Source of the DNA: Diadema antillarum
Lineage: Eukaryota
DNA length: 64,000 nt
Assembly: GCF_040938485.1 (NCBI RefSeq)
Contig: NW_027272584.1
Coordinates: 186,001 to 250,000, forward strand
Reading direction: 5' to 3'
The translations under genes and the position numbers were made by a program. The notes under the pieces were generated by a model. That model had not been told where the DNA came from, made no database searches, and saw only the letters and a program-made list of their open reading frames with translations. This document shows, piece by piece, positions 116-63,441 of the stretch; position 1 is the stretch's first letter, and each line of letters starts with the position of its first letter.

Positions 116-251
116 ATGGCTCTTCGGGCCAAGAATGACTTTTCTCAGGTGAAGGCGTACTTCTCAACTAAAGAATGGGCGGACATGAACGACTATGAGA
201 AGATGAGGTTGAAGAACATCAAAGAAAACTATGAGATGATGCGAGAAGTTG
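116..251 (+). CDS. PRDM9: PRDM9 coding exon 1, ancestral KRAB domain
   Basis: Acceptor ttgcag ends at 76, ATG at 116, donor G|gtaag at 252. [46 protein letters not shown] matches the human PRDM9 KRAB pattern (F..I..YF...EW..M...EK.R..N.K.NY). Confidence 0.93.
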
Positions 252-3200
252 GTAAGAAGCAAAGAGTGATAAGTTATGGAAGTGAAATACTAGGTGTTTC
301 AAAAAACATTTCCCACTTTTGATCATTAATAGCTCAAAAACTATTCATCCGATAAAACTGTCATTGATATAAACAATAGCTGAATAGTGTACAATTTGGT
401 TGAAGGTAATTTGAATGTGACAGCATAAATCAGTTTCATTAAATCTAAGATTGATTTTGAAGTAAGGTTTCAGATTTTGGTCAAATTTTAACCCTCTGTA
501 CAAAAATTGAACCTTGCCCAGGAACCAATGATGTGTATGTGAGTGTGTGCTGACAATGGCCCTGAACAATGGACATGCCTGAACCACCCGTTAACTAGGC
601 GTCAGTCTCTTGCTCCCAGGCACATGAATACTTAATCAATAATTCATGTGGATTGCCCTGGGCACTGCTAGTCTGGATTCATGCACGGTAAAGGGTAAAC
701 TGCATGCACATGGAAAAAGGAAGCACACGTTTCCATGTGCTTGCAAACACCACATTCCATTCCAGCTGGCAATCATTTTCAATTTTTGCTTCATATATCA
801 CTAAATTTGGGATATAGATAAGCATAAGTGATCTAAAGTTCCTCATTTTAATGCAACTGTCTACTAATTAAATAGTCTGACAAATTTTTCGCTTTTTGAT
901 AAAAAGAAATAATTTTTGGTAAAGAGTTCAGCAGCATTTATCATTGGGGCGATATGTTTCACAGTAGATTTATTTAAGGCTCCATTTACACAAGTGTATA
1001 CTCTAATTGATTTTCTTTGCTTCCTGTCACCGTGTTTACGATAGAACAGAAGGTATTCATTGTAATTTCGTTTTTCAGAAGTAGGGAGAGCACTGTCGAG
1101 ACCCAACGACAGTATCGGCAGGCGTTTGACTTTACACAGATACTGCCAGAGGCTGAATAAAGACTAGTTGTGATAGTGGAATTTCTCATGAATAAATAAT
1201 GAAGCATTCAAACCCTAACCATTGTTTAGGACCATTGTCAGGGTGTTAACCACACACTCCATACACACCCATTGACCCCTGTGCAAAGTGAAATTTTGTA
1301 CAGAGGGTTGAAAATAGAGCAAAATCTGGAACCTAACTGTGAAATTAATCATGGATTTCATGAAACTGATTTATGTTTTCATATTTAAACCACCTCCAAC
1401 CAAATTGTACACTATTCAGCTATTACTCATATCATTGACAGTGTTATCTGATATATAGTTTATGAATTATTAAGAATCAAAAGTGGGAAATGTTTTTTGA
1501 AACACCTAGTATATCTAGGGCCTAGGTAGGGCCTATAGTTCAGACAAAAGCATGACATGAACATTGGAGTCTAGATTTAGATTTTTTTTTTTTATTTCTG
1601 TAATTATAATTGTTGTTAGATCTCGAGCCATGTGTTATCATCAAAATAAAATTCATGTAAGAATACACTCATGTCACGGTATTATGTATTCATTTAAATC
1701 ATGTGACAGAATTTCGTACGGATTTGTATGTTTATTCCATGCCAGCTCTTGAATATGGACGCAAGAATAGAAGTTATAGAAGAGTAGGTCCTAGGCTATA
1801 TGTGTGCTCCCTTGTGGGTGTTGGGTTTGGGACAAGACTGTTATGGGTCAAAACTATCACAATTATATTAGTCCATCATATTCTGTTTGCATTGAAACAG
1901 TTGCAGTAGATTTATATTGTTGGCATACCGTTTTATGGATAGGTTTAGAGAAATGAAATAAAATCATCCCTCCCTTCTTTTTTTTTCATGTGTATCAAAG
2001 TTACTAGTATTATGTACGAGGGCTGCATGCAAATCAAGAGAATCTTAAGCTGTAACGTTAGCCCTGCTGTATTTTTCATTGTACGCTTATATTACTGATA
2101 CGTTTCTGCTGTACATTGCGTAAAGGCAATGAAAAAATATTCTGGTAACAAGTGTGATTATGTATTCGCATGTAGGCTACTCTGGCTCGCACAATGTATG
2201 TATGGGTGTATGTATGTTCATGTACAATGATAATACAGGAATCAATAAATCAAATCAAAATCAAATACCGTTTGTGAGCGTACATTGGTCGTTCATCAAT
2301 GAAATATCAGGACCGAAGGATCACCGCTACATTATCATACAGTGTATAGGGATTTGTTATATAGGGATAGGTATAGTGTAAAGGGATTTGTTAAGGGTTT
2401 TTGTTTCGGATTAGTTTTGTTAGTTATACAATGTAGGTCTTTTTGTCTCAGTTTCTTTGTTTCATCCATTTTCAAAGTATATCAGTCAATCGATCATACA
2501 ATTTCTTGTATTATGTGTGGGGGAATGCACCCTACAAGCCCAGCTTTTTAGCATTCCTCCCCATTTTCAGCATTTTCGTATGCTTACAATTTTCTAAACT
2601 TATCATTTATTCTTTATTATGAAATCTATGTACCAGTACTTGTATTCAATGTCAGTAATATATTTATATATTTCTGTTGGAAATAAAAAAATGGATGAGT
2701 GAATGAATGAATACAGGGAATTTGTGTTCAGGGTCTTGTTTCGCATCCATGTTTAAAATCCCGTTTCGTTTTAAACAGGACTGAATGTTCCAGCTCCAGA
2801 CTTCATGCAGAGTAGTCGAAAGAGGAAGAAATCAAGAAAAAGAGAGAGTGACAGTGAAGACGAGGAATGGACGCCTGGAGGCTGGAAGAAGAAATACACC
2901 AAACCAAGAGGTTAACGTCTCGGCTGTTCTTGTTTACAGGCTGTAATGTTTCTTCTCTTAACATGCCAGAGCATAAAGTACGTGTAGCATTGTTCCTTGT
3001 TCTGGCCAGCCATTATTTCTACTTCTCTGACTGCACGTGATAACTACTGTAATGAAATAAGGTTGCAGTTCATTATTCCGAAGGTTCGTTATTCCAAAGG
3101 TTCTTTAGTCCGAAGTTCGTTATTCCGAAGAGTCATTATTCCGAAGAGTCGTTAATCCGAAAATGTGATAAGGTTTGTTATTCCGAAGGTTCATTAATCC

Positions 3201-6200
3201 GAAAATGAAATAAGGTTCGTTATTCCGAAGGTTCGTTACGGACCTTGTTTTATTGTCGGATCAACGAACTTTCGGAATAACGAACTTTCTTAATAACGCC
3301 ACAAATATTTGGATTAACGAACCTTTTTTTTTTCATTTCGGATTTAACGAACCTCTAGTTAGACCCATAAGGAATTTGTGTGTTTCAGATTTAACGAATC
3401 TTCGGAATAACGAACAGCACCCAAAAAGTGGGTAAGATTTAAGATCTTCGGTACTGAGGGATATCGGCCTTCTACATTGCAGAATAAAGGGGATGAGTGA
3501 AAGGTCACGAGAAGCAAAAGCACGCAGAAAGATGGTGTACTCGTATTATCATGATACACTGTATATCACCTGCTTGACGTAAGACAGCAAGAAAATAAAG
3601 GTCGATATTCAACATTGTTCAACAAGGCCGAAATGTCAATAAAACGTGAAGTGTAGACATGATTTTTTGACTACTCTGCCAGAGTCTTTTTTTCTTCTTT
3701 GAAGAGCGTATGACATGACAAGGCAAAGGAAAAGGGTAAAAAGTTCAATGAATTTGCTCGGGAGTGAATAAGTTTGTTACACAACCGTTTAAATCACCTC
3801 TGTCATTGGTACATTTCCTGTGGGCATTCGTCAATGAAACATCATATCAAGGTAAATAAACGGGGAGAGCGTTTCAATTGAGTACGAGGCTGTTCTGTTT
3901 GTTAATGATTATGATTAACATTGCCTAAATATGATTTTATACAGATATTTTTTTTTCACAGAAATCTTATATTTATTTAAAAGCGCAAAGGTCACACACT
4001 GCTAAAATCAGTAGAGGCTATGGAATTATCAAGTCTCTGTTCAATCATGCCAATTAAGAATTGGTTTCTGTTAATTATATTTGGTGTTGTTCAAGAAAGT
4101 CTCTGTCAAGAATTTCCAAAGACTACTAACAGTTCAGTTGAATGTAAGGACAGGAAGTCATGCAGAACTTGTCGACATGATTTTTTTTTTTTGTCATATA
4201 CAGCGCTTACGGTCCCTTCTAGCTTCAATGTGATTGAAAAACTATATAAGTAAATTTACTGGCGAATAAACATAATATCTTTACATCGAAATAAATGTGC
4301 CATATATTGTCACTTAATATTACTCTGGGAACTGTTCCAGCAATCGTTTCTCTCATTCTAATGTAAATGTTATCGTTATTGTTTATTGACCGAGGTGTAA
4401 GTAAACCCCAAAATACATGTTATGGCTAGCGTGTTCATTTTTTCGTCTTTCTCAAATGACTTTGTGTTTAATCCACAGCATCGTTTAAGACACCCTTTAA
4501 AGCATCGCCTAGGAAGGAAAAGAAGAAAAGCTCTTGTGGAAATGCTTCAAAAGTGAGTAAAAATTAATGAAATTGTTTTACCAAACCACGAAACGGTCAC
4601 TGTACTTCGATGAGACATTTTATTCTCAACATTCTCAAGCTGAAGATGAGCTAATGAATTAGTTATAAAATCTGTATTTTGAAAAAAAATGGAAAATAAT
4701 CTGATGATAGCAATGATGTACAATATGACAGGGGGGATGTAACGGGTCAAGGAGAAAAGTGAAAAAAAAATAGATTTGATACTAATGGATTTGAATTCTA
4801 CTAGGTTTACCGGTAAGTCCTACAGTAATAGCGGTTGGTTTCATGAAAAGAAGGAACGAGACATTTTTCTTTGTGCAGAGACAACAGAAAGATCACCTTG
4901 GATAAGTAATCTAGTGCATCACGGTGTTAATGACTGAATATTAAGGTGATAGCAAGGGGTTAAAGCAAGATCTATGAAAATGTTACAAAGACTCGGGGGA
5001 AATTCAAGTTCAATGTAACTTCCTTTCGTTGGAAATTTAGAAGGCAGACTCCGCTAGATCACCCACTGGGAACCTTGGAGATCCTCTGGGCGATGGGGAC
5101 AAAACTAGGGATGGACAGATATCAGATCTTTTGGACTGGAAGGATTGCGGGGACAGGCAGGTGGAATCCAACGTTGACTCTCGGTCAAGCGCGCCTGCAG
5201 GTGACGGGACTGGTGGTCCAGCGAAATCAACCACAGAAGATACAACTGCCAGTCCTGCTCCATTCAAACCACCTGGACCAATGCAAGTGGGGCGGAAAGC
5301 AGGGCGACCATTAGGTAAAATTGATAATTACGTTGTCAAAAAACAAACAAACAAACAAAGAAAATCCCTATGAACTTTATCAGTAGCAGGCATTTATTAA
5401 ATTATGTAAATATAGAGTGCCTTAGTGTATTCAAATTAGTATAATGAAGCCATGAAATGACGCGCTGCGTTATGGGTTTTGATTCCTGTCAAATGGTCAT
5501 CTATGATCCTTCAACAAGGTCTTCAGGGCTGCCACGGTAAGAAGAAAAAAGTGCTTATAGTCGTAACTCCTTTCCTAAATATTCATTAGTTGCAAATTTG
5601 GTAATACAATACCAAAGTATACATTTTGATAATGGAATTAATGTAGACATTTACACTCCATTTCTCCGAATCATGGACATTGTTATCAGTGTACTTATAT
5701 TTTCGGTGATATTGCTGAAAATAATTTTGATGTATTCATGAAATTATGCTTAAGAAAGTAAATCACACAAGCCAACTTGGTTTGTATATTTCACAACTCC
5801 GTATCAACAATCATTAGAGCGAAATGTATATAAAAGAGAAGAACATAACAATAACATATTGAAGATCAGCATGACTTTAAGATAAGAAACATTTTTAAAC
5901 TTTTGTGAAGACAGCGCGAGCCCGTGTCTGAAAAAGCCTGAAACAACAACAAAAACAGGAATACATGAAATACATAAAATTGTTAATGATGTGTGGCTCA
6001 TCAAAGACTAAAGCAAGTATACATTGGAGCCAAGTGGATACAAAATCAAAACTGCAATGAATACAGACCGCTCAAGACTCTATTTCCTGAAATGTGTCCA
6101 GGACCTGCCTTGCGAAATGATCGCTAAGAGGACCACCATACCATTTCAGAGAACCGCACGTGCAAACCATAGATTCACGAGCAGTAAACAAACGGCTCTC

Positions 6201-9200
6201 CATTTTTAATTCTTAGAGAAACGACGCGAAACTTCGACGGCACCAGCTCCAACATCTCGTTATCCCAGAAGAGCAGTATCCAAGAAATGCTACAAGGAAG
6301 ACGACGTACCAGATGAGGATCACTACATATGTGAGTAGGCTATTCTAGTTTAGACGAAGATACTGTCACTTTTTGTTACGTTTTGTTAATAACTTGTTGC
6401 AAATATAGCAAGAATCTCTAGAATACAAGAAAGAAGGAACACATGAACAGTGAATGATTAGTAGCATACACATTGATTTTGGAATCGGGGCTTTTGGGAT
6501 TTCTCTTGAATCATTCTGCATTGTAGATAAACGAAAGCAGTTTCACTCTTTATAGATGTTAAAAAGATTCTTGTAAACGGTAGCCAGACTCGTTCTCTGG
6601 TATTTTTGATTCACATCAAGTAAAGTCTGAGGCTGCAGTGCAATATTGACATCGCTTTGTATTTGCTCTTGATGGGTTGATAACTTCGACAATATCAACT
6701 TGTCCAGAAATAATATAATTATGGCAGCAATCTATGAAAATCCCCATATAGTGATCCTTCAAAGGGCTAAAAACAACATTATTTTCCATAAAATACTTAT
6801 CAGTAGAAATTGAAGAAACTATATCCTTGCGAAATGCTGTGGGTTTTTCTTTGACAAAAAAAATATCGGCAAAACCTGCGGATCAAACAAGAGTCACATT
6901 TGATCAAGAAATATAACAGCCATCATGGCATAACCTACAATTTAAAGTTGATTATGCCATCAGTCATGGAATAGCAACATGTTATAATATATAAGTTCAT
7001 TATATTCTGTCAATTCCCGATGACGAGAACAATATTAATCACATGTGATTTAAAAAGATGAGCATTTAAGATGATCTAGGTTTACAGAGATCTCACTGAG
7101 AGTTACCAATACAAAATGCTAGTAGTTGCTTTCCTCCCCTATTGTCAGTTTGTGAAGAATGTAATGAGATATACGAAGGTGAGTGCATGAAACATCCACT
7201 GGTAATCATCCGAGACACAACCGTACCAAAGGGTTGCAAAAACAGAGCGAGGAACACTCTCCCAGGAGGCCTGGTGATCGGACAGTCTTCTATTCCTGGA
7301 GCTGGACTAGGGGTCAAAGCTACTGAGCACATACCCAAGGGCCATCGGTTCGGACCTTATGAAGGTGATATAGTGGACGCAGAGACCGGCTTCGACAGCG
7401 GATATGCGTGGGAAGTAAGTCAAGTTCATTTTTTTTTTCTTTTCAGGTTAAGTACCTCTTTTTAGCCATGTTAAATAAACATGTTGTTAAGTTAGATAAC
7501 AAAATTATGGCCCCTGTTTGAAAGTGACCGTCAATGAGAGAATGACCTCTCGTGCTTTATTTCTCCTCAGAAAATCCAGCAAAAACTAGCACAGCAGAAA
7601 TGAAACGAGGTGTAAATTATGTTCTCAAGGCACACTCGCTTTTGTGAAGATTTAAGAATAAAACAAATTCCAGGAATTTTTTTCTAGCTTTACAAACAGC
7701 TCTATTGGAATAATGCAATGGATGATTTCATAGAGCAAGACTACACCTTTATGACTGAGAAAAGAGTAAATCGAAATGCGTTTCCCTTACTTTACGAGTC
7801 TCGGGGTTTTAATGAACGTCAGTTACTGTATCTTATTATATAACGTTAGGATAGACACTCCTTAAAAAAGAATACATGTGTGTGTGAGTGTGTGTGGATG
7901 TGTGTGTGTTGCGCCTGGCTGAGTGTGCATGTTCAATTCGTTTTCAGAAATTACTCCTGCATCACTGGTAAAAGGCTTCGATGACATGCGAGCAACAAGT
8001 GTTTTGTAGATATTGCATGTATTATATAGATTTCAGCCATTTTTAGGCCCTCTCAAAATCACAAGTCAAACTAAAAACAAAGCCGAAAAACTTAAAGCTC
8101 ATTTAGAAATTGCATAGGTTTTATTCTTATTGCCTAATACCAAAATGTCAAATATCATTTGTAACATGCAAGATTTGTAAAATTCTCCTTGTTGTTAACA
8201 TAATTTCCTTTTTCAAATGTAGGTGTGTCTAGATGGCAAGCCGCATCACTACGTTGACAGTAGAAGCGAGGAAACGGGCAACTGGATGAGGTATATCAAC
8301 TGTGCCCGAAACGAGGCAGAGCAGAACCTCGTGTCTTTCCAGTACCTTGGACAGATCTACTACCGCACCTTCAAACCAATCTGCCCTGGCACTGAACTGT
8401 TGGTCTTCTATGGCGACCAGTATGCAAAGGAACTTGGAATACAGCTGCACCGCAACAAACTTAAAACCTGCACAGGTAATCTTAATTATAGAAGCTATGC
8501 TAATAAGCCAGTTTGGGGTTTCAGTTTGAGCAGGTTGGTTTTTAATTTCACTGAGATAGGCATTTGTAATGCTATGATTATTAATGGATCCTTATAACTA
8601 GTGCCTGCCAGTACATCCACCTGACAGCAAGCCTGGTATTTGGCAGTGTTAACAGAAAAAGTTTGTTAATGTGTTCAAAACAGCACAATGAAATAGATGC
8701 TTCCCAAAGTGTTGATTGACGAACCATTCTGGTCACTTCATCTACACGGGTTCATTCTTTGATAGAATACGAGTTCCATAAAATGCTATGTCGGGCAAGC
8801 AGCTGCATTATGTCGCTTTGAATTGAGTGAAGTGCCTAACCAACTGAGAAAAATGAAAGGTCATATTTGTACCCATGTGCACGTGAGCTATCTCCGAACT
8901 GGCTTACACATGTTATAAGAAGTTAGGTTCGTACCATGCAGCGATATATGAACCTTTATGTGGACATAATAATTCCTTTACTTGATTTGAGTTTTCGGGA
9001 AACTACCACTTATAATTCTTATCAACGAAACGGTATGAAAACATCAAAATGAAAGAAAGAAGGGAAACACGAACAAAATCGCACGCAAAACGTAAACCAG
9101 GCGAAATATCCTTGATCTCGTTTCACATGATATAATATGTATCTTTGATTACTTCTAAATTTACTTGCTGAATGTTGTTCGTTTTCGATCTTGCTTTGTT

Positions 9201-11657
9201 TTGCGTGAAATAAACTAATTTTTCTTACGGCAATTAGCGAATCAACTACAGTGTATAAACATAAATGTCCATCGGATTTCAACACTGGTGTCTTGGCTTT
9301 GTTTGAGTAATGACTTACACGTACTGGGTATTGAGTCATCTATTGCGAACAAATTACCGGGTTCTTTGTTATTTATGCCTCCTCCGGAGGAAAAAAAAAT
9401 AACTGAGTGTGGAGGTATTACTTTTAAATTTGAAATTTCCACTGATGATATTATGGCTAAGTGATAAACAGAACATAGATACATTTATAATCATTTGCAT
9501 GAATACAATGTTGGTGTTGTGTCAAAGCCCAAAATCATATGTAATTTTCATGTGGTTTGAAAGTAAGTCTTGAACAAAAATCTTTAGCTCCGAATATAAA
9601 TTGATAGTAACCATTACGAAGGATAGCAGCTTATCGATAATTAATGTGGATTTTGCCCAAATGTGAAATAAGATGAATTCAGTAAATGCAGAACTGCTAG
9701 TAGTTATAACATCAGTGAAGTTTGAGGAAAATTGGACAAGCCCTTCGAAGGCTAAGAACTTTTACATTTATTCTCATGTAGTGTCGTCGCTTTATAGATC
9801 AGAAAACTTCAGTAATTTGTGATTTCACAGTAGGGTAACAATACATTTCACATCATTTTCATTTCCTCTCATAATGAAGAAACGCTAAAAATGTTACCCT
9901 GGTTAATATGTTACCCTTAAAATTTATCTTTTTAGTTGGAGAAATGTGCGCTTTTCATTGATGCAAAAAATCTTGTTATTTTATAGACTTCTTTCCCGCA
10001 TTTTCTTCATAGCATTATCCTTACTTGTACAGTGACATCACAATTTGTAGCCGTCCTGTTATCTAGCAACAACAACATTAGCAATAAAAATTTATAATTC
10101 GTATGTTGATAAGATATTTTCTAGGTAATAGGGCCTACGAGATATTTTACCTCGTATGGTAGTATAGTACTATACCTCGTATAGTACTATATTTATAGTA
10201 CACTGTACTATTTTGTTACACAGGAGTGACAAGTTCATATCTCCCTAAGGTTTCAAAATGTTTTACTTTTTGTAGACCCTGGACTCTACACATGTGAGGT
10301 ATGCGGGAGAGTGTTCTCACGACCCAGGTATCTAGCCGGACATCTCAAGTACAGCCATGGTCACGTTGGGTTATTACCAGACCAAGATGCTCCCGATGCA
10401 GCCTTCTTGGCCTTTATCAATCGTCAACAGCAGCAGTGGCCTGTGCAAGGAAGCAATGGCAGACGTTCAGACGTATCATCTAAGCAGAGCCATGTCAGAT
10501 ACCCAGCGTGCAAGAAGTGTGGTCAAATGTTCCAGTCTTTAACACTATTCACACAGCACTTGACAAATCACCCTGAGGAATTGTGTAGTCTGAAGTCCAA
10601 AGTGTATGAGCAAGATGCGTCGAAGGGACGCGAAGATATGGGGCTGTTTGCACAATCTGCCAGATTATCGGAGGAAAGCCAGCGAACCACAGGAAATGAG
10701 TCCGCTTGTGATGATATCAGCACATTTCTTAAAACAGACCAAAATATCTCTAGTCCATCAAATATAAAACTTCATCAGGCAAATGGAATCAGTAAGCAAA
10801 TTTCTTCTTGTTCAAAGAAAAGCATAACCTCAAATACGAAATTTCGGAAGCACGATGAGCAGTCAAAAATGTGTGGAATCATTCAGGGTTGTGAAAAACC
10901 ATTTGCGTGTGATGTTTGTAAAAAGGCATTCAATACATCATCTAATCTCAGGATACACCAGCGTATTCACAGTGGTGAGAAACCATTTGTGTGTGATGTG
11001 TGTAAAAAGACATTCAGTCAATTAGGTAATCTCATTAGACACCAGCGTATTCACAGTGGTGAGAAACCATTTGTGTGTGATGTGTGTCAAAAGGCATTCA
11101 GTCAATTACCTCATCTCAGGACACACCAGCGTATGCACAGTGGTGAGAAACCATTTGTGTGTGATGTGTGTAAAAAGGCATTCGATACATCATCTGTACT
11201 CAGGACACACCAGCGTATTCACAGTGGTGAGAAACCATTTGTGTGTGATGTGTGTCAAAAGGCATTCAGTCAATTAGCTACTCTCAGGAAACACCAGCGT
11301 ATTCACAGTGGTGAGAAACCATTTGTGTGTGATGTGTGTCAAAAGGCATTCAGTCAATCAGCTACTCTCAGGAAACACCAGCGTATTCACAGTGGTGAGA
11401 AACCATTTGTGTGTGATGTGTGTCAAAAGGCATTCAGTGATTTAGGTAATTTCAGGTCACATCAGCGTATTCACAGTGGTGAGAAACCATTTGTGTGTGA
11501 TGTGTGTCAAAAGGCATTCAGACGATCAGCTCATCTCAGGACACATAGAAGTAAGTGCAATATTCCAGAGAAGGCTTCTTGCAGCAGGTCTGCAGAAAAC
11601 AAAATGAATTCACAGGTCAAAAACACTGTGTTACCTATTGCAGAAAAAGAGGACTAG
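116..11657 (+). CDS. PRDM9: PRDM9/Meisetz histone H3K4/K36 methyltransferase, full-length; join(116..251,2779..2910,4479..4552,5041..5314,6217..6330,7149..7414,8223..8475,10276..11657) = 2631 nt, 876 aa
   Basis: All introns are GT-AG and the phases chain (1,1,0,1,1,0,1) into one open frame. There is an in-frame TAA at 98-100 upstream of the ATG. Domain order is KRAB-like ([31 protein letters not shown]), SSXRD-like, CxxC zinc knuckle, PR/SET ([30 protein letters not shown]), post-SET C2H2, then a tandem C2H2 array. This architecture is diagnostic of PRDM9. Confidence 0.95.
290..1509. mobile_element. Non-autonomous Tc1/mariner-like element with long TIRs in PRDM9 intron 1
   Basis: TA|CTAGGTGTTTCAAAAAACATTTCCCACTTTTGA ... 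TCAAAAGTGGGAAATGTTTTTTGAAACACCTAG|TA. About 33 bp of perfect terminal IR, with diverged IR continuing for about 290 bp. TA flanks, no transposase ORF. Confidence 0.82.
2380..2712 (+). mobile_element. L2-clade (Crack/Daphne-like) LINE 3' end
   Basis: Stem-loop GGGGAATGC-ACCCTACAAGCCCAGCTTTTTA-GCATTCCTCCCC at about 2519-2562, followed by AATAAA and a (GAAT)n tail. The 5' boundary is approximate. Confidence 0.55.
2779..2910 (+). CDS. PRDM9: PRDM9 coding exon 2 (KRAB tail, basic NLS-like and acidic segment)
   Basis: ttaaacag| acceptor. Phase-1 frame [33 protein letters not shown] parallels human G-LRATRPAFM and the DSDEEWTP motif. The donor gttaac is non-optimal. Confidence 0.88.
3060..3422. mobile_element. 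Foldback-type MITE built from about 15-bp sub-repeats (GTTCGTTATTCCGAAG)
   Basis: The left half has tandem GTTCGTTATTCCGAAG variants and the right half has the reverse complement (CTTCGGAATAACGAAC). Terminal IR GGTTGCAGTTCATTATTCCGAAG / CTTCGGAATAACGAACAGCACCC. Confidence 0.75.
4479..4552 (+). CDS. PRDM9: PRDM9 coding exon 3 (linker)
   Basis: atccacag| acceptor and |gtgagt donor. Encodes [24 protein letters not shown], phase 1 to 0. Confidence 0.75.
5041..5314 (+). CDS. PRDM9: PRDM9 coding exon 4 (low-complexity linker)
   Basis: aaatttag| acceptor and G|gtaaaa donor. Open GC-richer frame, phase 0 to 1, compatible with both neighbouring exons. Confidence 0.72.
6217..6330 (+). CDS. PRDM9: PRDM9 coding exon 5 (SSXRD-like)
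   Basis: tcttag| and |gtgagt sites. [37 protein letters not shown] parallels human ...[23 protein letters not shown]. Confidence 0.88.
7149..7414 (+). CDS. PRDM9: PRDM9 coding exon 6 (zinc knuckle and PR/SET N-half)
   Basis: attgtcag| and |gtaagt sites. [16 protein letters not shown]...[19 protein letters not shown]...FGPYEG...SGYAWE. Confidence 0.96.
8223..8475 (+). CDS. PRDM9: PRDM9 coding exon 7 (PR/SET C-half)
   Basis: aatgtag| and G|gtaatc sites. [53 protein letters not shown]. Confidence 0.97.
10276..11657 (+). CDS. PRDM9: PRDM9 terminal exon (post-SET fingers plus zinc-finger array)
   Basis: tttttgtag| acceptor. [28 protein letters not shown], a second isolated finger [21 protein letters not shown], then 8 tandem fingers. 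Stop TAG at 11655-11657. Confidence 0.95.
10893..11564 (+). repeat. Coding minisatellite, 8 x 84-bp zinc-finger units
   Basis: Units start at 10893, 10977, 11061, 11145, 11229, 11313, 11397 and 11481. Scaffold GAGAAACCATTTGTGTGTGATGTGTGT(C/A)AAAAGGCATTC...CACCAGCGTATTCACAGTGGT is nearly invariant. Confidence 0.98.
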
Positions 11658-60798: not shown

Positions 60799-62310
60799 TT
60801 ATTATGACAGCTCTTAAACCGGATTCCTTATTGCATTTTGAATGAATTACTTACAATGTAATGCAGTAACAGACCTGCAAACCTTCCTGAGTGAAAAAAA
60901 ATCAGTCGACGTTTTGGCTAGGAAATAGGAAAGAAAGAGCACTTCCCATATAAATGTGTAAACTTCCCATATAAGTGTGTAATAGAATATTCTCAAGAAA
61001 AAAAAAATAAGGTAAGTCCTGTTGAAACAAGAGCGGGAAATGGTCAAAATTCAGATTCTTTTCTCGAAATTCAAAATGGTTGGGAGGTCTGCCGGAAGAT
61101 CTGACATCTGTCATGTTTATAACGAATTCCTCAATAATTTGTTCCAGGAAAGGGCCTATATGTTGCGTTTATTCAACTAGTGCAAATAGTATTGTTCATA
61201 ATCATTTCTTTCATTTTTTTCCTTGTCAATTTTATAACTGGCAAGGGAACGACGTCATCTCATTTGAATATCTGTTGGATGTTGTTTACAGGAATCAATG
61301 CTGTAAGACGGCCATAGTCGTGTGTCGATGGCACTGTTCAAACTATCCCACATCAGTCGTCACTGACGGGCAGTAACACCAAGCGTTGGCACGTATTTTT
61401 CTTTTCTTTTGATTCAGGTGAGTGTACAAGAAAGCTAAATTACGAAAGCAATGCCTTTGTAATCCAAATATGAAGAACTTTCAACCAAAAGGCCTTAGAT
61501 TCGTTGAAAAATTATGGATTTAGCGCCTTTTGGTGGCAAGCTCTTCATATTATTGCAGATGGAGTGCAATCCGTCAAAATCCAGTAACACTTCAGTGTAA
61601 TTAGACGAATATCAGACAGTCCGTTCAAAATTCATGCAATTCTAAAGTTTCGGTGTCTTCATACGTTAAAATCAAAAGACCACTAAAATTCGTGATGTCA
61701 CTGCAGAGTGCACCATAGAACGTTACAAAGAAAATGCCACAAAATCTCATGTTTTTATCAAATCAAAAGTGCTCATTCCTTTACTTGTTATGATATCATA
61801 GGATGCATATTTGATATTATCCTCCTGCTTTCTGGAAGAGGGAAGTCAAATGCGCTTTTAACATATTATACCAGAATGAAAATTATATTCTATTCTGCTT
61901 ACATTCTACGAGCTATGTGCATTCATCTGTAACTACTTTAAACCAATTTACCCTCAATCTGTAGACCGTAAATCCACTCCATGCACAAACCACTGACTAT
62001 TCCCCGATTATCCATAACAACCAATAGAAAGGCTTTTTGGATTACCCCTTTCTCTGCAGGATTAGAGAACTGTGGACAGTGTGTAGAATGTTATGGGGGT
62101 TTCTTTAGCAGTCTCGGAACTCAAAGGGGTAATTAAATACCGAGATGTTGGTACTTTTTAATAGCTGTCGGGTCCTGATACTGATTATAATACTTTTATT
62201 AACACTTGTCAATCTATATGAAAAAGGCACTCAAACAATATTTGTTAATATTGTTTTTTTTTTTCTTGGCAGGTAACCACGGGCGTCCCGCTGACGGATT
62301 AAAAAATAAA

Positions 62311-63441
62311 ATGGTTGTAGGATGGGCACGATACAATCCGTTTAGAAGGAAGTTTTGTCGGCTAATTCTCCTGGTCGTCATTATCCTGAATTTCGGCATC
62401 GCGATCCTGTTCCCCAAGAAAGTCTTTTCTGATGGAATGGCGCGAAAGTTGGTAGCTGACCAGGACATACCCAGGAGCACGTCTGTAGTAGACGAGCGAA
62501 ATTCAACCGTTGGTGGCGCTCCATCGATTGCTCCGAACTTGACAGTGCACGCCATGACGACGGCGAAATACACCTCCAGTGGGGACGCTGTCACTGAAGG
62601 CACGAAGCATGTCAATCCGCATGACTTCAAGTACGTCTACAACGAGCCGGATAGGTGTGAGAAGGGGGAGAATGCTAGCGACGCGTTTCTCCTCGTTTTG
62701 GTCTTGTCAAGTCCTGATCACTTCAAACAGCGTACAGCTATTCGCGACACCTGGGGCGGCGTGGCCAATGTAGATGGCCACGATGTTCGCGTCCTCTTTC
62801 TACTTGGGCAAAATAGTCCCGCCAACGGCACCTTAGAGTCACTCGTGAGAGCAGAGAGTGAGCAATTCCACGACATCATCCAGGAAGATTTTATCGACTC
62901 GTACGAAAACCTGACTTTGAAGACGATCGCGGTTATGAAGTGGGCAATGACCTTCTGCCCCAAGGTCGCCTACGTCATGAAAGCGGATGATGACGTACTG
63001 TTGCATATTTATAACTTGGTGTGGTTTCTGTCCAATCAGACGGCCAGTACTCTGAATAACTACATTCTCTGCGCGAGGTTTGCGGGGGTGAAGCCCATCC
63101 GCGATCCCAAGAACAAGTGGTACATGCCCGAAAGCCAGTTCCCCGGTGATGTGTACCCAGTCTACTGCTCAGGTCCCGGCTATGTGATGTCCTCCGATCT
63201 CCCCGCAGTGATCTACGAAGCTTCTCTGGACACTCCGGTCATACGACTCGAGGATGCCTATGTAGGGGTTTGCCTCAAGGGTCGCGGCGTGTCTGTCATG
63301 AATCACGAAGGTTTCTACTTTTTTACACAACCCTACTCATTTTGTAATCGACGATCGACGATGATTTTATGGCATAATACAGGACCGGATCAGATGCGGA
63401 AATACTGGGGTTCCCTCTTCACAGAAACGTGCGAAAATTAA
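62311..63441 (+). CDS. Beta-1,3-galactosyltransferase-like protein (GT31, B3GALT1/5-like), 376 aa, single coding exon
   Basis: Acceptor ttttcttggcag| at 62272, ATG at 62311. N-terminal TM (LILLVVIILNFGIAILF), then RTAIRDTWG, VLFLLG, DIIQEDFIDSYENLTLKT, KADDDV (DxD), YPVYCSGPGYV and EDAYVG. Confidence 0.95.
   Translation: MVVGWARYNPFRRKFCRLILLVVIILNFGIAILFPKKVFSDGMARKLVADQDIPRSTSVVDERNSTVGGAPSIAPNLTVHAMTTAKYTSSGDAVTEGTKHVNPHDFKYVYNEPDRCEKGENASDAFLLVLVLSSPDHFKQRTAIRDTWGGVANVDGHDVRVLFLLGQNSPANGTLESLVRAESEQFHDIIQEDFIDSYENLTLKTIAVMKWAMTFCPKVAYVMKADDDVLLHIYNLVWFLSNQTASTLNNYILCARFAGVKPIRDPKNKWYMPESQFPGDVYPVYCSGPGYVMSSDLPAVIYEASLDTPVIRLEDAYVGVCLKGRGVSVMNHEGFYFFTQPYSFCNRRSTMILWHNTGPDQMRKYWGSLFTETCEN

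What the first reader, a model, noticed from the sequence alone, without database searches (positions are those of the whole stretch)
116..11657. Complete four-domain PRDM9 (KRAB-SSXRD-PR/SET-ZF array) in an apparently invertebrate genome
Seen: an intact 8-exon ORF with every domain, no stops or frameshifts. Known: in vertebrates, PRDM9 copies that direct recombination hotspots retain KRAB, SSXRD, an active SET and a fast-evolving ZF array, while truncated copies generally lack this signature. A KRAB-bearing Meisetz has been reported in sea urchin, so the gene itself is not new, but a hotspot-positioning role outside vertebrates is not established. Inference: this locus is a candidate PRDM9-directed recombination system in an invertebrate deuterostome.
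Basis: partly seen in the sequence, partly recalled or inferred. Interest (0 to 1): 0.85.

Follow-up and report, generated by a model that had tools for sequence, protein, structure and literature searches.

The report
Full-length PRDM9 gene in sea urchin
This is an intact copy, in the sea urchin Diadema antillarum, of PRDM9, the gene that chooses where chromosomes exchange DNA in mammals; it has every sequence hallmark of the working vertebrate gene, but such genes were already known in sea urchins and other invertebrates, and what it does there is still untested.

Summary
Window 116-11657 (+) carries an intact 8-exon gene with GT-AG introns throughout, encoding 876 aa. The window is Diadema antillarum (GCA_040938485.1, contig JBFRCO010001696.1).

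The protein has:
- a KRAB-related N-terminus;
- a divergent SSXRD;
- a zinc knuckle and a PR/SET domain closest to PRDM9 (181.6 bits against 111.8 for PRDM11), with the three catalytic tyrosines kept;
- eight tandem C2H2 fingers in the last exon.

The array is an 84-bp minisatellite. The four DNA-contact positions are exactly its four most variable ones (PoD 0.47; contact-codon pN/pS 6.4 against 1.1 elsewhere).

New here: the assembly holds four intact full-length copies in two types. Types A and B differ by dS about 0.20, with KRAB and SET under strong purifying selection. All four have different arrays. Copies B1 and B2 differ by dS 0.008 outside the array yet have 7 against 8 fingers.

The gene itself is not new. 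KRAB-bearing PRDM9 in sea urchin dates from 2006, four-domain PRDM9-like proteins are annotated across invertebrates, and a 2026 preprint shows the same hallmarks in cnidarians. RefSeq already names this locus PRDM9-like, though its model omits the array.

A hotspot role remains an inference. Expression, ZCWPW1/2 and recombination maps could not be tested.

The scan also noted the array separately on this window (s1-211216).

The parts
116..251 (+). Exon 1: start codon and the first part of the KRAB-related domain (aa 1-45; domain from aa 9 = nt 140)
   Evidence: Gene model. Pfam KRAB E 0.041, 14 bits, below the cut-off. Vertebrate-only PRDM9 KRAB profile 79.4 bits, E 7.6e-27 over aa 9-78.
2779..2910 (+). 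Exon 2: second part of the KRAB-related region (to aa 78 = nt 2876), including the conserved [11 protein letters not shown] stretch
4479..4552 (+). Exon 3: basic linker
   Evidence: tblastn to P0002 100%; model.
5041..5314 (+). Exon 4: low-complexity linker; dN/dS 0.41 between copy types A and B
6217..6330 (+). Exon 5: SSXRD-like motif (aa 213-241 = nt 6237-6323; RYPRR...[12 protein letters not shown])
   Evidence: No Pfam SSXRD hit. Aligned to the vertebrate SSXRD in the hhalign comparison. Vertebrate-only profile 8.7 bits, E 1.1e-4, at the collinear place. Y221, R224 and Y231 are invariant in 23 sequences.
7149..7414 (+). Exon 6: pre-SET zinc knuckle and the first half of PR/SET; catalytic Tyr314 (equivalent to human Y276) at 7358-7360
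   Evidence: Pfam PRDM2_PR; alignment to PDB 4ijd; coordinates.
8223..8475 (+). Exon 7: second half of PR/SET; Tyr379 (equivalent to Y341) at 8361-8363 and Tyr395 (equivalent to Y357) at 8409-8411
10276..11657 (+). Exon 8 (terminal): post-SET C2H2 finger (10287-10358), second isolated finger (10500-10571), linker, finger array, C-terminal tail and stop codon
10887..11558 (+). Tandem zinc-finger array: 7 canonical C2H2 units of 84 bp plus a terminal C2HC-type unit. Contact residues (-1, 2, 3, 6) are TSNI, QGNR, QPHT, TSVT, QATK, QATK, DGNS, RAHT.
   Evidence: TRF: period 84, 7.8 copies, 88% matches, no indels. PoD 0.469. pN/pS 6.4 at contact codons against 1.14 elsewhere. Contact positions are the top set, 1 of 20475.
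10494..10663 (+). 170-nt GT..AG 'intron' inside exon 8, used only by the public 500-aa model. It shifts the frame to a stop at 10697-10699 and so drops the finger array.
   Evidence: Acceptor and donor are absent from copy B1, whose public model reads through.

Best explanation
The locus is an intact, selectively maintained, full-length PRDM9 orthologue (KRAB-related, SSXRD, zinc knuckle, PR/SET, C2H2 array) of the sea urchin Diadema antillarum. It is one of four intact copies in that assembly. The copies fall into two old types, A and B; the window is A1. Shown: the gene structure, the domain homologies, retention of the three catalytic tyrosines, purifying selection on KRAB and SET, and a minisatellite finger array whose variation sits on the DNA-contact residues and which differs among all copies and from the D. 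setosum orthologue. Inferred, by analogy with mouse and human PRDM9: in meiotic prophase the array binds specific DNA motifs, PR/SET lays down H3K4me3 and H3K36me3 on nearby nucleosomes, the KRAB-related and SSXRD parts bind partner proteins, and the marked sites become preferred double-strand-break and recombination sites. Erosion of motifs by biased repair would then select for new arrays. I put identity as a full-length PRDM9 orthologue at 0.95 or more, and the hotspot-designating role at about 0.5.
For: - Gene model: 8 exons, all GT-AG, 876 aa, no stop.
- PR/SET: PDB PRDM9 181.6 bits, against PRDM11 111.8 and other PRDMs 91 or less. The nearest ESM Atlas clusters are PRDM9.
- Catalytic tyrosines: the equivalents of Y276, Y341 and Y357 are kept (alignment, positions; the residues are named in bioRxiv 10.64898/2026.09.07.749791).
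- N-terminus: echinoderm against vertebrate PRDM9 profiles give 99.9%, E 9e-36, over 212 columns spanning KRAB to SSXRD. A vertebrate-only KRAB profile gives 79.4 bits.
- Array: 84 bp x 7.8 copies. PoD is 0.469 against 0.143 if diversity were spread evenly over the 28 positions (my calculation), and lies inside the 0.29-1.0 range of full-length PRDM9. pN/pS is 6.4 at contact codons against 1.14 elsewhere. The four contact positions are the four most variable (1 of 20475 sets).
- Selection since the A/B split (dS 0.20): dN/dS is 0.06 on KRAB and 0.07 on SET, but about 2 in the array.
- All five Diadema genes are intact, with 7-10 fingers and different contact sets. B1 and B2 differ by dS 0.008 outside the array but have different arrays.
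- Arrays are homogenised within each lineage: 0.83-0.93 within an array against 0.45-0.62 between genera at non-contact positions.
- Sea-urchin PRDM9 ESTs from germ-line tissue are cited in PMC2779102.
Against: - No expression data exist for this species or locus. No ZCWPW1/ZCWPW2 search was possible, and there are no recombination or chromatin data, so the mechanism rests on analogy.
- Pfam's own KRAB and SSXRD models do not reach threshold on this protein, and the SSXRD match is weak (8.7 bits).
- RefSeq's models for both type-A loci stop before the array.
- The contact-residue signature also occurs in some non-PRDM9 or truncated zinc-finger genes (PoD up to 0.78 in truncated cnidarian paralogues), so it is not proof of a hotspot role.
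- The pairwise counts among repeat units are not independent events.
Confidence: 0.5

Rival explanations
1. A genuine PRDM9-family protein that works as a sequence-specific germ-line or developmental chromatin regulator and does not position recombination. One possibility is targeting fast-changing repeats or transposons, much as KRAB zinc-finger proteins do; that arms race would also explain the diversifying selection on contact residues.
For: The role of PRDM9 in invertebrates is stated to be largely unknown. Several intact copies with different arrays recall an expanding zinc-finger family. Truncated PRDM9 paralogues with high contact-residue diversity exist in cnidarians.
Against: The whole four-domain set and the catalytic tyrosines are kept under strong purifying selection. 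In vertebrates that combination goes with the hotspot role, and partial copies lose the rapid finger evolution (citing Baker et al. 2017). The ancestral PRDM9-type KRAB is described as inactive for the TRIM28 route (PMC8835667 abstract).
Confidence: 0.3
2. The window copy (A1) is mainly expressed as a finger-less KRAB-SSXRD-SET protein, as in the public 500-aa model. The array downstream would then be untranslated or separately expressed, and any hotspot role would fall to the type-B copies.
For: RefSeq model XP_071481031.1 uses a 170-nt intron (10494-10663) that shifts the frame to a stop at 10699, and the array is called as a separate 262-aa gene. The twin locus A2 is also modelled as truncated. 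Short finger-less PRDM9 isoforms are known in mouse (PMC2779102).
Against: - The frame stays open for 460 codons from the exon-8 acceptor through the array in A1, and likewise in A2, B1, B2 and D. setosum.
- The linker between SET and the array has dN/dS 0.47.
- The two type-A models use different internal donors.
- The donor and acceptor are missing in B1.
- The D. setosum orthologue of type A is modelled full length at 905 aa.
- The donor GTCAGA departs from the usual consensus (my reading).
Confidence: 0.12
3. The four copies are not four genes. A1/A2 and B1/B2 are haplotype pairs of two loci in an assembly that was not purged of haplotypes, or that has a false duplication. On this reading the window shows allelic array polymorphism rather than extra paralogues.
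For: A1 and A2 are collinear over at least 26 kb at 92-97%, and A1 lies on a short 691-kb contig. B1 and B2 are 97-99% identical over 30 kb, with dS 0.008.
Against: B1 and B2 lie 3.56 Mb apart on one contig. dS between A1 and A2 (0.087) is nearly as large as that to D. setosum (0.115). This rival bears on copy number, not on what the gene is, and it would strengthen the PRDM9-like picture. Types A and B are paralogous in either case: dS 0.20, different intron sizes, and flanks that are not collinear beyond about 16 kb.
Confidence: 0.45

Closest known systems
Vertebrate full-length PRDM9 (human and mouse; structures 4ijd, 6nm4, 4c1q)
   Same: The domain order is the same: KRAB-related, SSXRD, zinc knuckle, PR/SET, one post-SET finger, then a tandem C2H2 array in a single terminal exon. 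The three catalytic tyrosines are kept. The array is a minisatellite with diversity focused on positions -1, 2, 3 and 6.
   Different: - Whole-protein identity is only about 36-44%.
- SSXRD is too divergent for Pfam's model.
- There is an extra isolated finger (aa 492-515) found only in Diadema.
- Fingers carry an H-x3-H...SGEKPF linker, and the last unit is C2HC.
- Several intact copies exist per genome.
- Function is not shown.
Sea-urchin Meisetz/PRDM9 (Birtle and Ponting 2006, as cited in PMC2779102 and PMC8835667) and the RefSeq PRDM9-like proteins of Lytechinus, Strongylocentrotus, Patiria, Asterias and crinoids
   Same: They form the same orthologous group. Echinoid SET domains form one clade (100/99) with the two Diadema rows as sisters. 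Four-domain models exist for L. pictus, L. variegatus, Patiria, Antedon and Anneissia.
   Different: The Diadema proteins are 54-57% identical to the other echinoid models over the part aligned. The array backbone is lineage-specific. For this locus the public model lacks the array.
Multiple full-length PRDM9 paralogues of cnidarians (bioRxiv 10.64898/2026.09.07.749791)
   Same: Several intact four-domain copies sit in one genome, each with the catalytic tyrosines and high contact-residue diversity, and with different finger numbers.
   Different: This is a deuterostome. The A/B split (dS 0.20) looks older than the D. antillarum - D. setosum divergence (dS 0.115), whereas the cnidarian full-length paralogues are described as mostly recent, post-speciation duplicates. 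The haplotype-versus-paralogue status of the twin copies is not resolved here.
PRDM7 and truncated PRDM9 paralogues (finger-less or KRAB-less)
   Same: The public 500-aa model of this locus would be of this kind (KRAB-SSXRD-SET only).
   Different: The genomic ORF continues in frame through the full array, so the locus itself is not truncated.
PRDM11
   Same: It is the second-best PR/SET match (111.8 bits).
   Different: It scores 70 bits lower than PRDM9. From general knowledge, not tested here, PRDM11 lacks the KRAB-SSXRD N-terminus and the tandem array.

Membership tests
Full-length (hotspot-competent type) PRDM9 | N-terminal KRAB-related domain | tested here: met
   Pfam KRAB scores only 14 bits (cut-off 20.4). 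A profile built from vertebrate PRDM9 alone gives 79.4 bits, E 7.6e-27, over aa 9-78. The hhalign comparison of echinoderm and vertebrate N-termini gives 99.9%.
Full-length (hotspot-competent type) PRDM9 | SSXRD motif between KRAB and SET | tested here: met
   The match is weak. There is no Pfam PF09514 hit. A vertebrate-only profile gives 8.7 bits, E 1.1e-4, at the collinear site aa 216-245. The motif lies inside the hhalign match. Y221, R224 and Y231 are invariant across 23 sequences.
Full-length (hotspot-competent type) PRDM9 | PR/SET domain of the PRDM9 subfamily rather than another PRDM | tested here: met
   PDB search: PRDM9 181.6 bits, PRDM11 111.8, PRDM14 91.1, PRDM1 84.8. A tree with other PRDM families could not be built because no such sequences were available by reference.
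Full-length (hotspot-competent type) PRDM9 | Catalytic tyrosines equivalent to human Y276, Y341 and Y357 | tested here: met
   Tyr314, Tyr379 and Tyr395 align with the tyrosines of FGPYEG, QIFYRT and LLVWYGD in 4ijd. The human numbering assumes that the chain starts at residue 195, which is from memory.
Full-length (hotspot-competent type) PRDM9 | Tandem C2H2 array encoded in one terminal exon | tested here: met
   Eight units at 10887-11558 inside exon 8.
Full-length (hotspot-competent type) PRDM9 | Fast-evolving array: concerted evolution plus diversity concentrated at contact residues, with turnover between alleles, copies and species | tested here: met
   PoD 0.469. pN/pS 6.4 against 1.14. 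Contact positions rank 1 of 20475. Five Diadema genes have 7-10 fingers and different contact sets, although B1 and B2 differ by dS 0.008 elsewhere. No population sample was available.
Full-length (hotspot-competent type) PRDM9 | A transcript that joins SET and the array in one protein, expressed in meiotic germ cells | not testable with these tools
   No RNA data. The public models disagree: truncated for A1 and A2; full length for B1, B2 and D. setosum.
Full-length (hotspot-competent type) PRDM9 | Co-occurrence with the readers ZCWPW1 and ZCWPW2 | not testable with these tools
   No query sequence was available by reference, and no eukaryotic genome search tool exists here. The scan's notes hold nothing on this.
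Full-length (hotspot-competent type) PRDM9 | Recombination hotspots set by the array allele, away from promoters | not testable with these tools
   This needs LD or pedigree maps, or DMC1 and H3K4me3/H3K36me3 ChIP.

The most novel reading that the evidence does not exclude
Diadema keeps two anciently duplicated, fully equipped PRDM9 loci (A and B). Each carries rapidly turning-over arrays, giving four different arrays in one assembly, and all of them designate meiotic break sites. If so, PRDM9-directed recombination with its self-destructive hotspot cycle would operate in an invertebrate deuterostome and with several PRDM9 genes at once. That would place the mechanism at or before the base of deuterostomes, and together with cnidarians at the base of eumetazoans.
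Probability: 0.35. Interest if true: 0.75.

Novelty: new member of a known kind. Interest (0 to 1): 0.42.

Why it matters
Whether PRDM9 sets recombination hotspots outside vertebrates is an open question (bioRxiv 10.64898/2026.09.07.749791). Sea urchins shed gametes in huge numbers, can be crossed in the laboratory and are very polymorphic, so they are a practical place to test it. This locus and its sister copies give concrete targets: four arrays to genotype, predicted motifs to look for in maps, and a SET domain to assay. The gene's existence does not change current views, because full-length PRDM9 in sea urchins and other invertebrates is already on record. The added value is the evidence for very recent array turnover, and for two old paralogous full-length loci in a deuterostome.

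Tried and rejected
- **Pfam on the N-terminus.** KRAB scored below its cut-off and SSXRD gave no hit. I replaced this with profile-profile and vertebrate-only profiles. My first custom profiles included the query's own family, so they are circular for the window protein. I used them only to survey other species.
- **ML tree of PR/SET.** It holds only PRDM9-like rows, so it cannot test PRDM9 against other PRDMs. It shows only that the Diadema copies are sisters inside an echinoid clade. Seven rows with a partial SET were left out, as listed. Other PRDM families were available only as printed PDB alignments, not as references, so they could not be added.
- **'Copy 2 is a haplotig of the window'.** Rejected for A against B: dS 0.20, intron sizes 2527 against 575 and 808 against 2049, and no collinearity beyond about 16 kb. 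It stays open for A1/A2 and B1/B2.
- **Search for a type-B gene in D. setosum.** None was found among annotated proteins. This says little, because the gene may be unannotated.
- **ZCWPW1/2.** Nothing in the scan's notes and one irrelevant paper. I had no sequence to search with.
- **Conservation of the second isolated finger (aa 492-515) across echinoids.** I tried this as a test of the 170-nt 'intron'. The finger is Diadema-specific, so the test was uninformative.
Full report
**What is there**

Three-frame reading of the + strand showed protein-like open stretches for a KRAB-like start, an SSXRD-like motif, two PR/SET pieces and a long zinc-finger ORF. Pfam found PRDM2_PR/SET on the two middle pieces and eight to nine C2H2 fingers on the last. 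The first SET piece alone matched solved PRDM9 structures best.

A search with the non-repetitive part of the last ORF returned two Diadema antillarum proteins. One of them, P0002 (XP_071481031.1, 'histone-lysine N-methyltransferase PRDM9-like'), is 100% identical to the window over exons 1-7 and the start of exon 8. Its locus L001 matches the window at 100%. The window is therefore D. antillarum, assembly GCA_040938485.1, contig JBFRCO010001696.1. It is a diadematoid sea urchin.

Requiring GT-AG junctions and agreement with P0002 left a single model of eight exons: 116-251, 2779-2910, 4479-4552, 5041-5314, 6217-6330, 7149-7414, 8223-8475 and 10276-11657. It encodes 876 aa with no internal stop.

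**Which PRDM**

Against all PDB chains the protein scores as follows:
- PRDM9: 181.6, 171.2 and 164.4 bits on three structures.
- PRDM11: 111.8 bits.
- PRDM14, PRDM1, PRDM12, PRDM2 and PRDM4: 65-91 bits.
- MECOM, PRDM10, PRDM16 and PRDM5: 40-64 bits.

The alignment to 4ijd shows tyrosines at the places of FGPYEG, QIFYRT and LLVWYGD. In the window protein these are Tyr314, Tyr379 and Tyr395. The 2026 preprint names the three catalytic residues as Y276, Y341 and Y357. The mapping of chain positions to those numbers uses my recollection that the chain starts at residue 195.

The nearest ESM Atlas clusters are PRDM9 clusters. All vertebrate hits in the homology search are PRDM9 or PRDM7.

**KRAB and SSXRD**

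Pfam's own models are not satisfied. KRAB reaches 14 bits against a cut-off of 20.4 on exon 1. The scan of the first 250 residues found no family at all, and the whole-protein scan found neither KRAB nor SSXRD.

In a 23-sequence alignment the echinoderm N-termini line up with vertebrate PRDM9 over YFSxxEWAExxxYEKxRxKNxKxNYEMMxxxGLxVPKPxFM...SDEEWxP and again over RYPxRxxxxKxYxExxxPxDDxYxFCEDC.

A profile of ten echinoderm N-termini against a profile of seven vertebrate ones gives 99.9% probability, E 9e-36, over 212 columns running from KRAB to SSXRD. In those vertebrates Pfam does call KRAB, and SSXRD in three of the four tested.

Profiles built from the vertebrates alone give 79.4 bits (E 7.6e-27) for aa 9-78, but only 8.7 bits (E 1.1e-4) for aa 216-245. 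So the KRAB-related domain is secure. The SSXRD is present but divergent.

**The finger array**

Tandem Repeats Finder reports an 84-bp unit, 7.8 copies, 88% matches and no indels at 10891-11545. In protein terms there are seven canonical units plus a terminal C2HC-like unit (aa 621-844, nt 10887-11558).

- The share of amino-acid diversity carried by positions -1, 2, 3 and 6 (PoD, as defined) is 0.469. Even spread over the 28 positions would give 0.143 (my calculation). This lies within the 0.29-1.0 range reported for full-length PRDM9.
- Among the seven units, pN/pS is 6.4 at the four contact codons and 1.14 at the other 24.
- The four contact positions are exactly the four most variable. 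Only 1 of the 20475 possible four-position sets scores as high.
- Non-contact positions are 0.83-0.93 identical within an array but 0.45-0.62 between genera. That is concerted evolution.

The repeat-to-repeat counts are not independent events, so these are descriptive measures, not formal tests.

The second hit, P0001 (827 aa, XP_071501126.1), lies on another contig (L002). Cluster look-up revealed two more D. antillarum proteins, P0060 (856 aa) and P0061 (499 aa), and a D. setosum protein, P0059 (905 aa). Their loci are L003, L004 and L005. I rebuilt all the gene models. All five have eight exons and are intact:

| Copy | Locus | Length (aa) |
|---|---|---|
| A1 | window | 876 |
| A2 | L004 | 933 |
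| B1 | L002 | 827 |
| B2 | L003 | 856 |
| D. setosum, type A | L005 | 905 |

Divergence outside the array:

| Pair | dS | dN/dS |
|---|---|---|
| A against B | about 0.20 | about 0.28 |
| A against D. setosum | 0.115 | 0.28 |
| A1 against A2 | 0.087 | 0.24 |
| B1 against B2 | 0.008 | 0.73 |

Between A1 and B1, dN/dS is 0.06 on KRAB and 0.07 on zinc knuckle plus SET, but about 2 in the array. A and B share only about 16 kb of collinear sequence at 70-93% identity, and their intron sizes differ. They are therefore paralogues, and their split appears older than the split between the two Diadema species.

A1 and A2 are collinear over at least 26 kb at 92-97%. B1 and B2 are collinear over 30 kb at 97-99%, and lie 3.56 Mb apart on one contig. 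I cannot tell whether these twins are haplotypes or recent duplicates.

Either way the arrays have changed fast. Finger numbers are 8, 10, 7, 8 and 9. The contact sets differ almost entirely, even between B1 and B2, which are nearly identical elsewhere.

**The public models**

RefSeq's model for the window locus uses a 170-nt GT..AG interval inside exon 8 (10494-10663). This shifts the frame to a stop at 10699, and the array is called as a separate 262-aa gene. A2 is also modelled as truncated, but at a different internal point. B1, B2 and the D. setosum gene are modelled full length. In B1 the acceptor is deleted and the donor is absent.

The in-frame ORF through linker and array in all five genes, and dN/dS of 0.47 in the linker, argue that the full-length protein is made. 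Only RNA data can settle this.

**What is known already**

- A KRAB-bearing Meisetz/PRDM9 in sea urchin goes back to Birtle and Ponting 2006 (cited).
- Oliver et al. 2009 reported concerted evolution of the fingers in Nematostella, Lottia and Capitella, with positive selection at contact positions shown for Nematostella. They also cite a sea-urchin germ-line EST (PMC2779102).
- Thomas et al. 2009 noted conservation of the non-finger part down to echinoderms (PMC2794550).
- Vervoort et al. counted 18 Prdm genes in S. purpuratus (PMC4760075).
- A September 2026 preprint shows the full hallmark set, multiple full-length paralogues and ZCWPW1/2 in cnidarians. It states that the role of PRDM9 in invertebrates remains largely unknown.
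- In public annotation, four-domain PRDM9-like proteins exist in Lytechinus, Patiria, crinoids, oysters, Lineus and cnidarians.

**Verdict**

The identification as a full-length PRDM9 orthologue is secure. The hotspot role is a reasonable inference (about 0.5) that nothing here could test. The gene is a new member of a known kind. The modestly new points are the two old full-length paralogous loci in a deuterostome and direct evidence of very recent array turnover. The same array was noted separately by the scan on this window (s1-211216), and my counts agree with that note.

Noticed in passing
window 25592-26749 (-): A 385-aa open stretch matches the Major Facilitator Superfamily (MFS_1, E 2.8e-15). 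In D. setosum an MFS_1 gene also lies downstream of the PRDM9 orthologue on the minus strand (L005 32048-34583), so the neighbourhood is syntenic between the two species.
   Followed up: partly
window 62206-63441 (+): Single-ORF beta-1,3-galactosyltransferase (Galactosyl_T, E 2.2e-53; 411 aa).
   Followed up: partly
window 18199-18382 and 45648-45924; also L001 about 4761-5054 and L002 about 3789-4051: A short interspersed repeat of about 180-280 bp matches in both orientations (85-93% identity). It is palindromic or TIR-like, so probably a MITE-type element. It also lies upstream of both PRDM9 types.
   Followed up: no
window 284-549 against 1251-1512: An inverted repeat of about 265 bp (83% identity) lies inside intron 1 of the PRDM9 gene.
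   Followed up: no
window 10494-10699 and 10869-11657; L004 10001-20437 and 20479-21435: The public gene calls split both type-A PRDM9 loci into a finger-less PRDM9-like protein and a separate zinc-finger protein, although the genomic frame is continuous. This is a likely annotation artefact and may also affect the S. purpuratus 'PRDM7' and 'zinc finger protein' models (P0005, P0008, P0026, P0044).
   Followed up: partly
L002 (B1) array, aa 600-767 of P0001: The B1 array is a three-finger block (QCNT-RFIT-QSDT) duplicated in tandem, which is a fresh unequal-exchange event.
   Followed up: partly
Arrays of A1 (window 10887-11558) against B1 (L002): Silent divergence between the A and B arrays is only 0.048, against 0.20 in the rest of the gene. 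Non-contact codons are as similar between the paralogues' arrays (0.946) as within them (0.93-0.96). This hints at exchange between paralogous arrays or strong codon constraint.
   Followed up: partly
window 33804-34856 (+): A 350-aa ATG-initiated ORF with no Pfam match.
   Followed up: no
Lytechinus pictus P0062 (921 aa) and P0003 (800 aa), same 28.5-Mb scaffold: A second long PRDM9-like protein, named 'zinc finger protein 724-like', lies in L. pictus on the same scaffold as the annotated PRDM9-like gene. Multi-copy PRDM9 may be general in echinoids.
   Followed up: no
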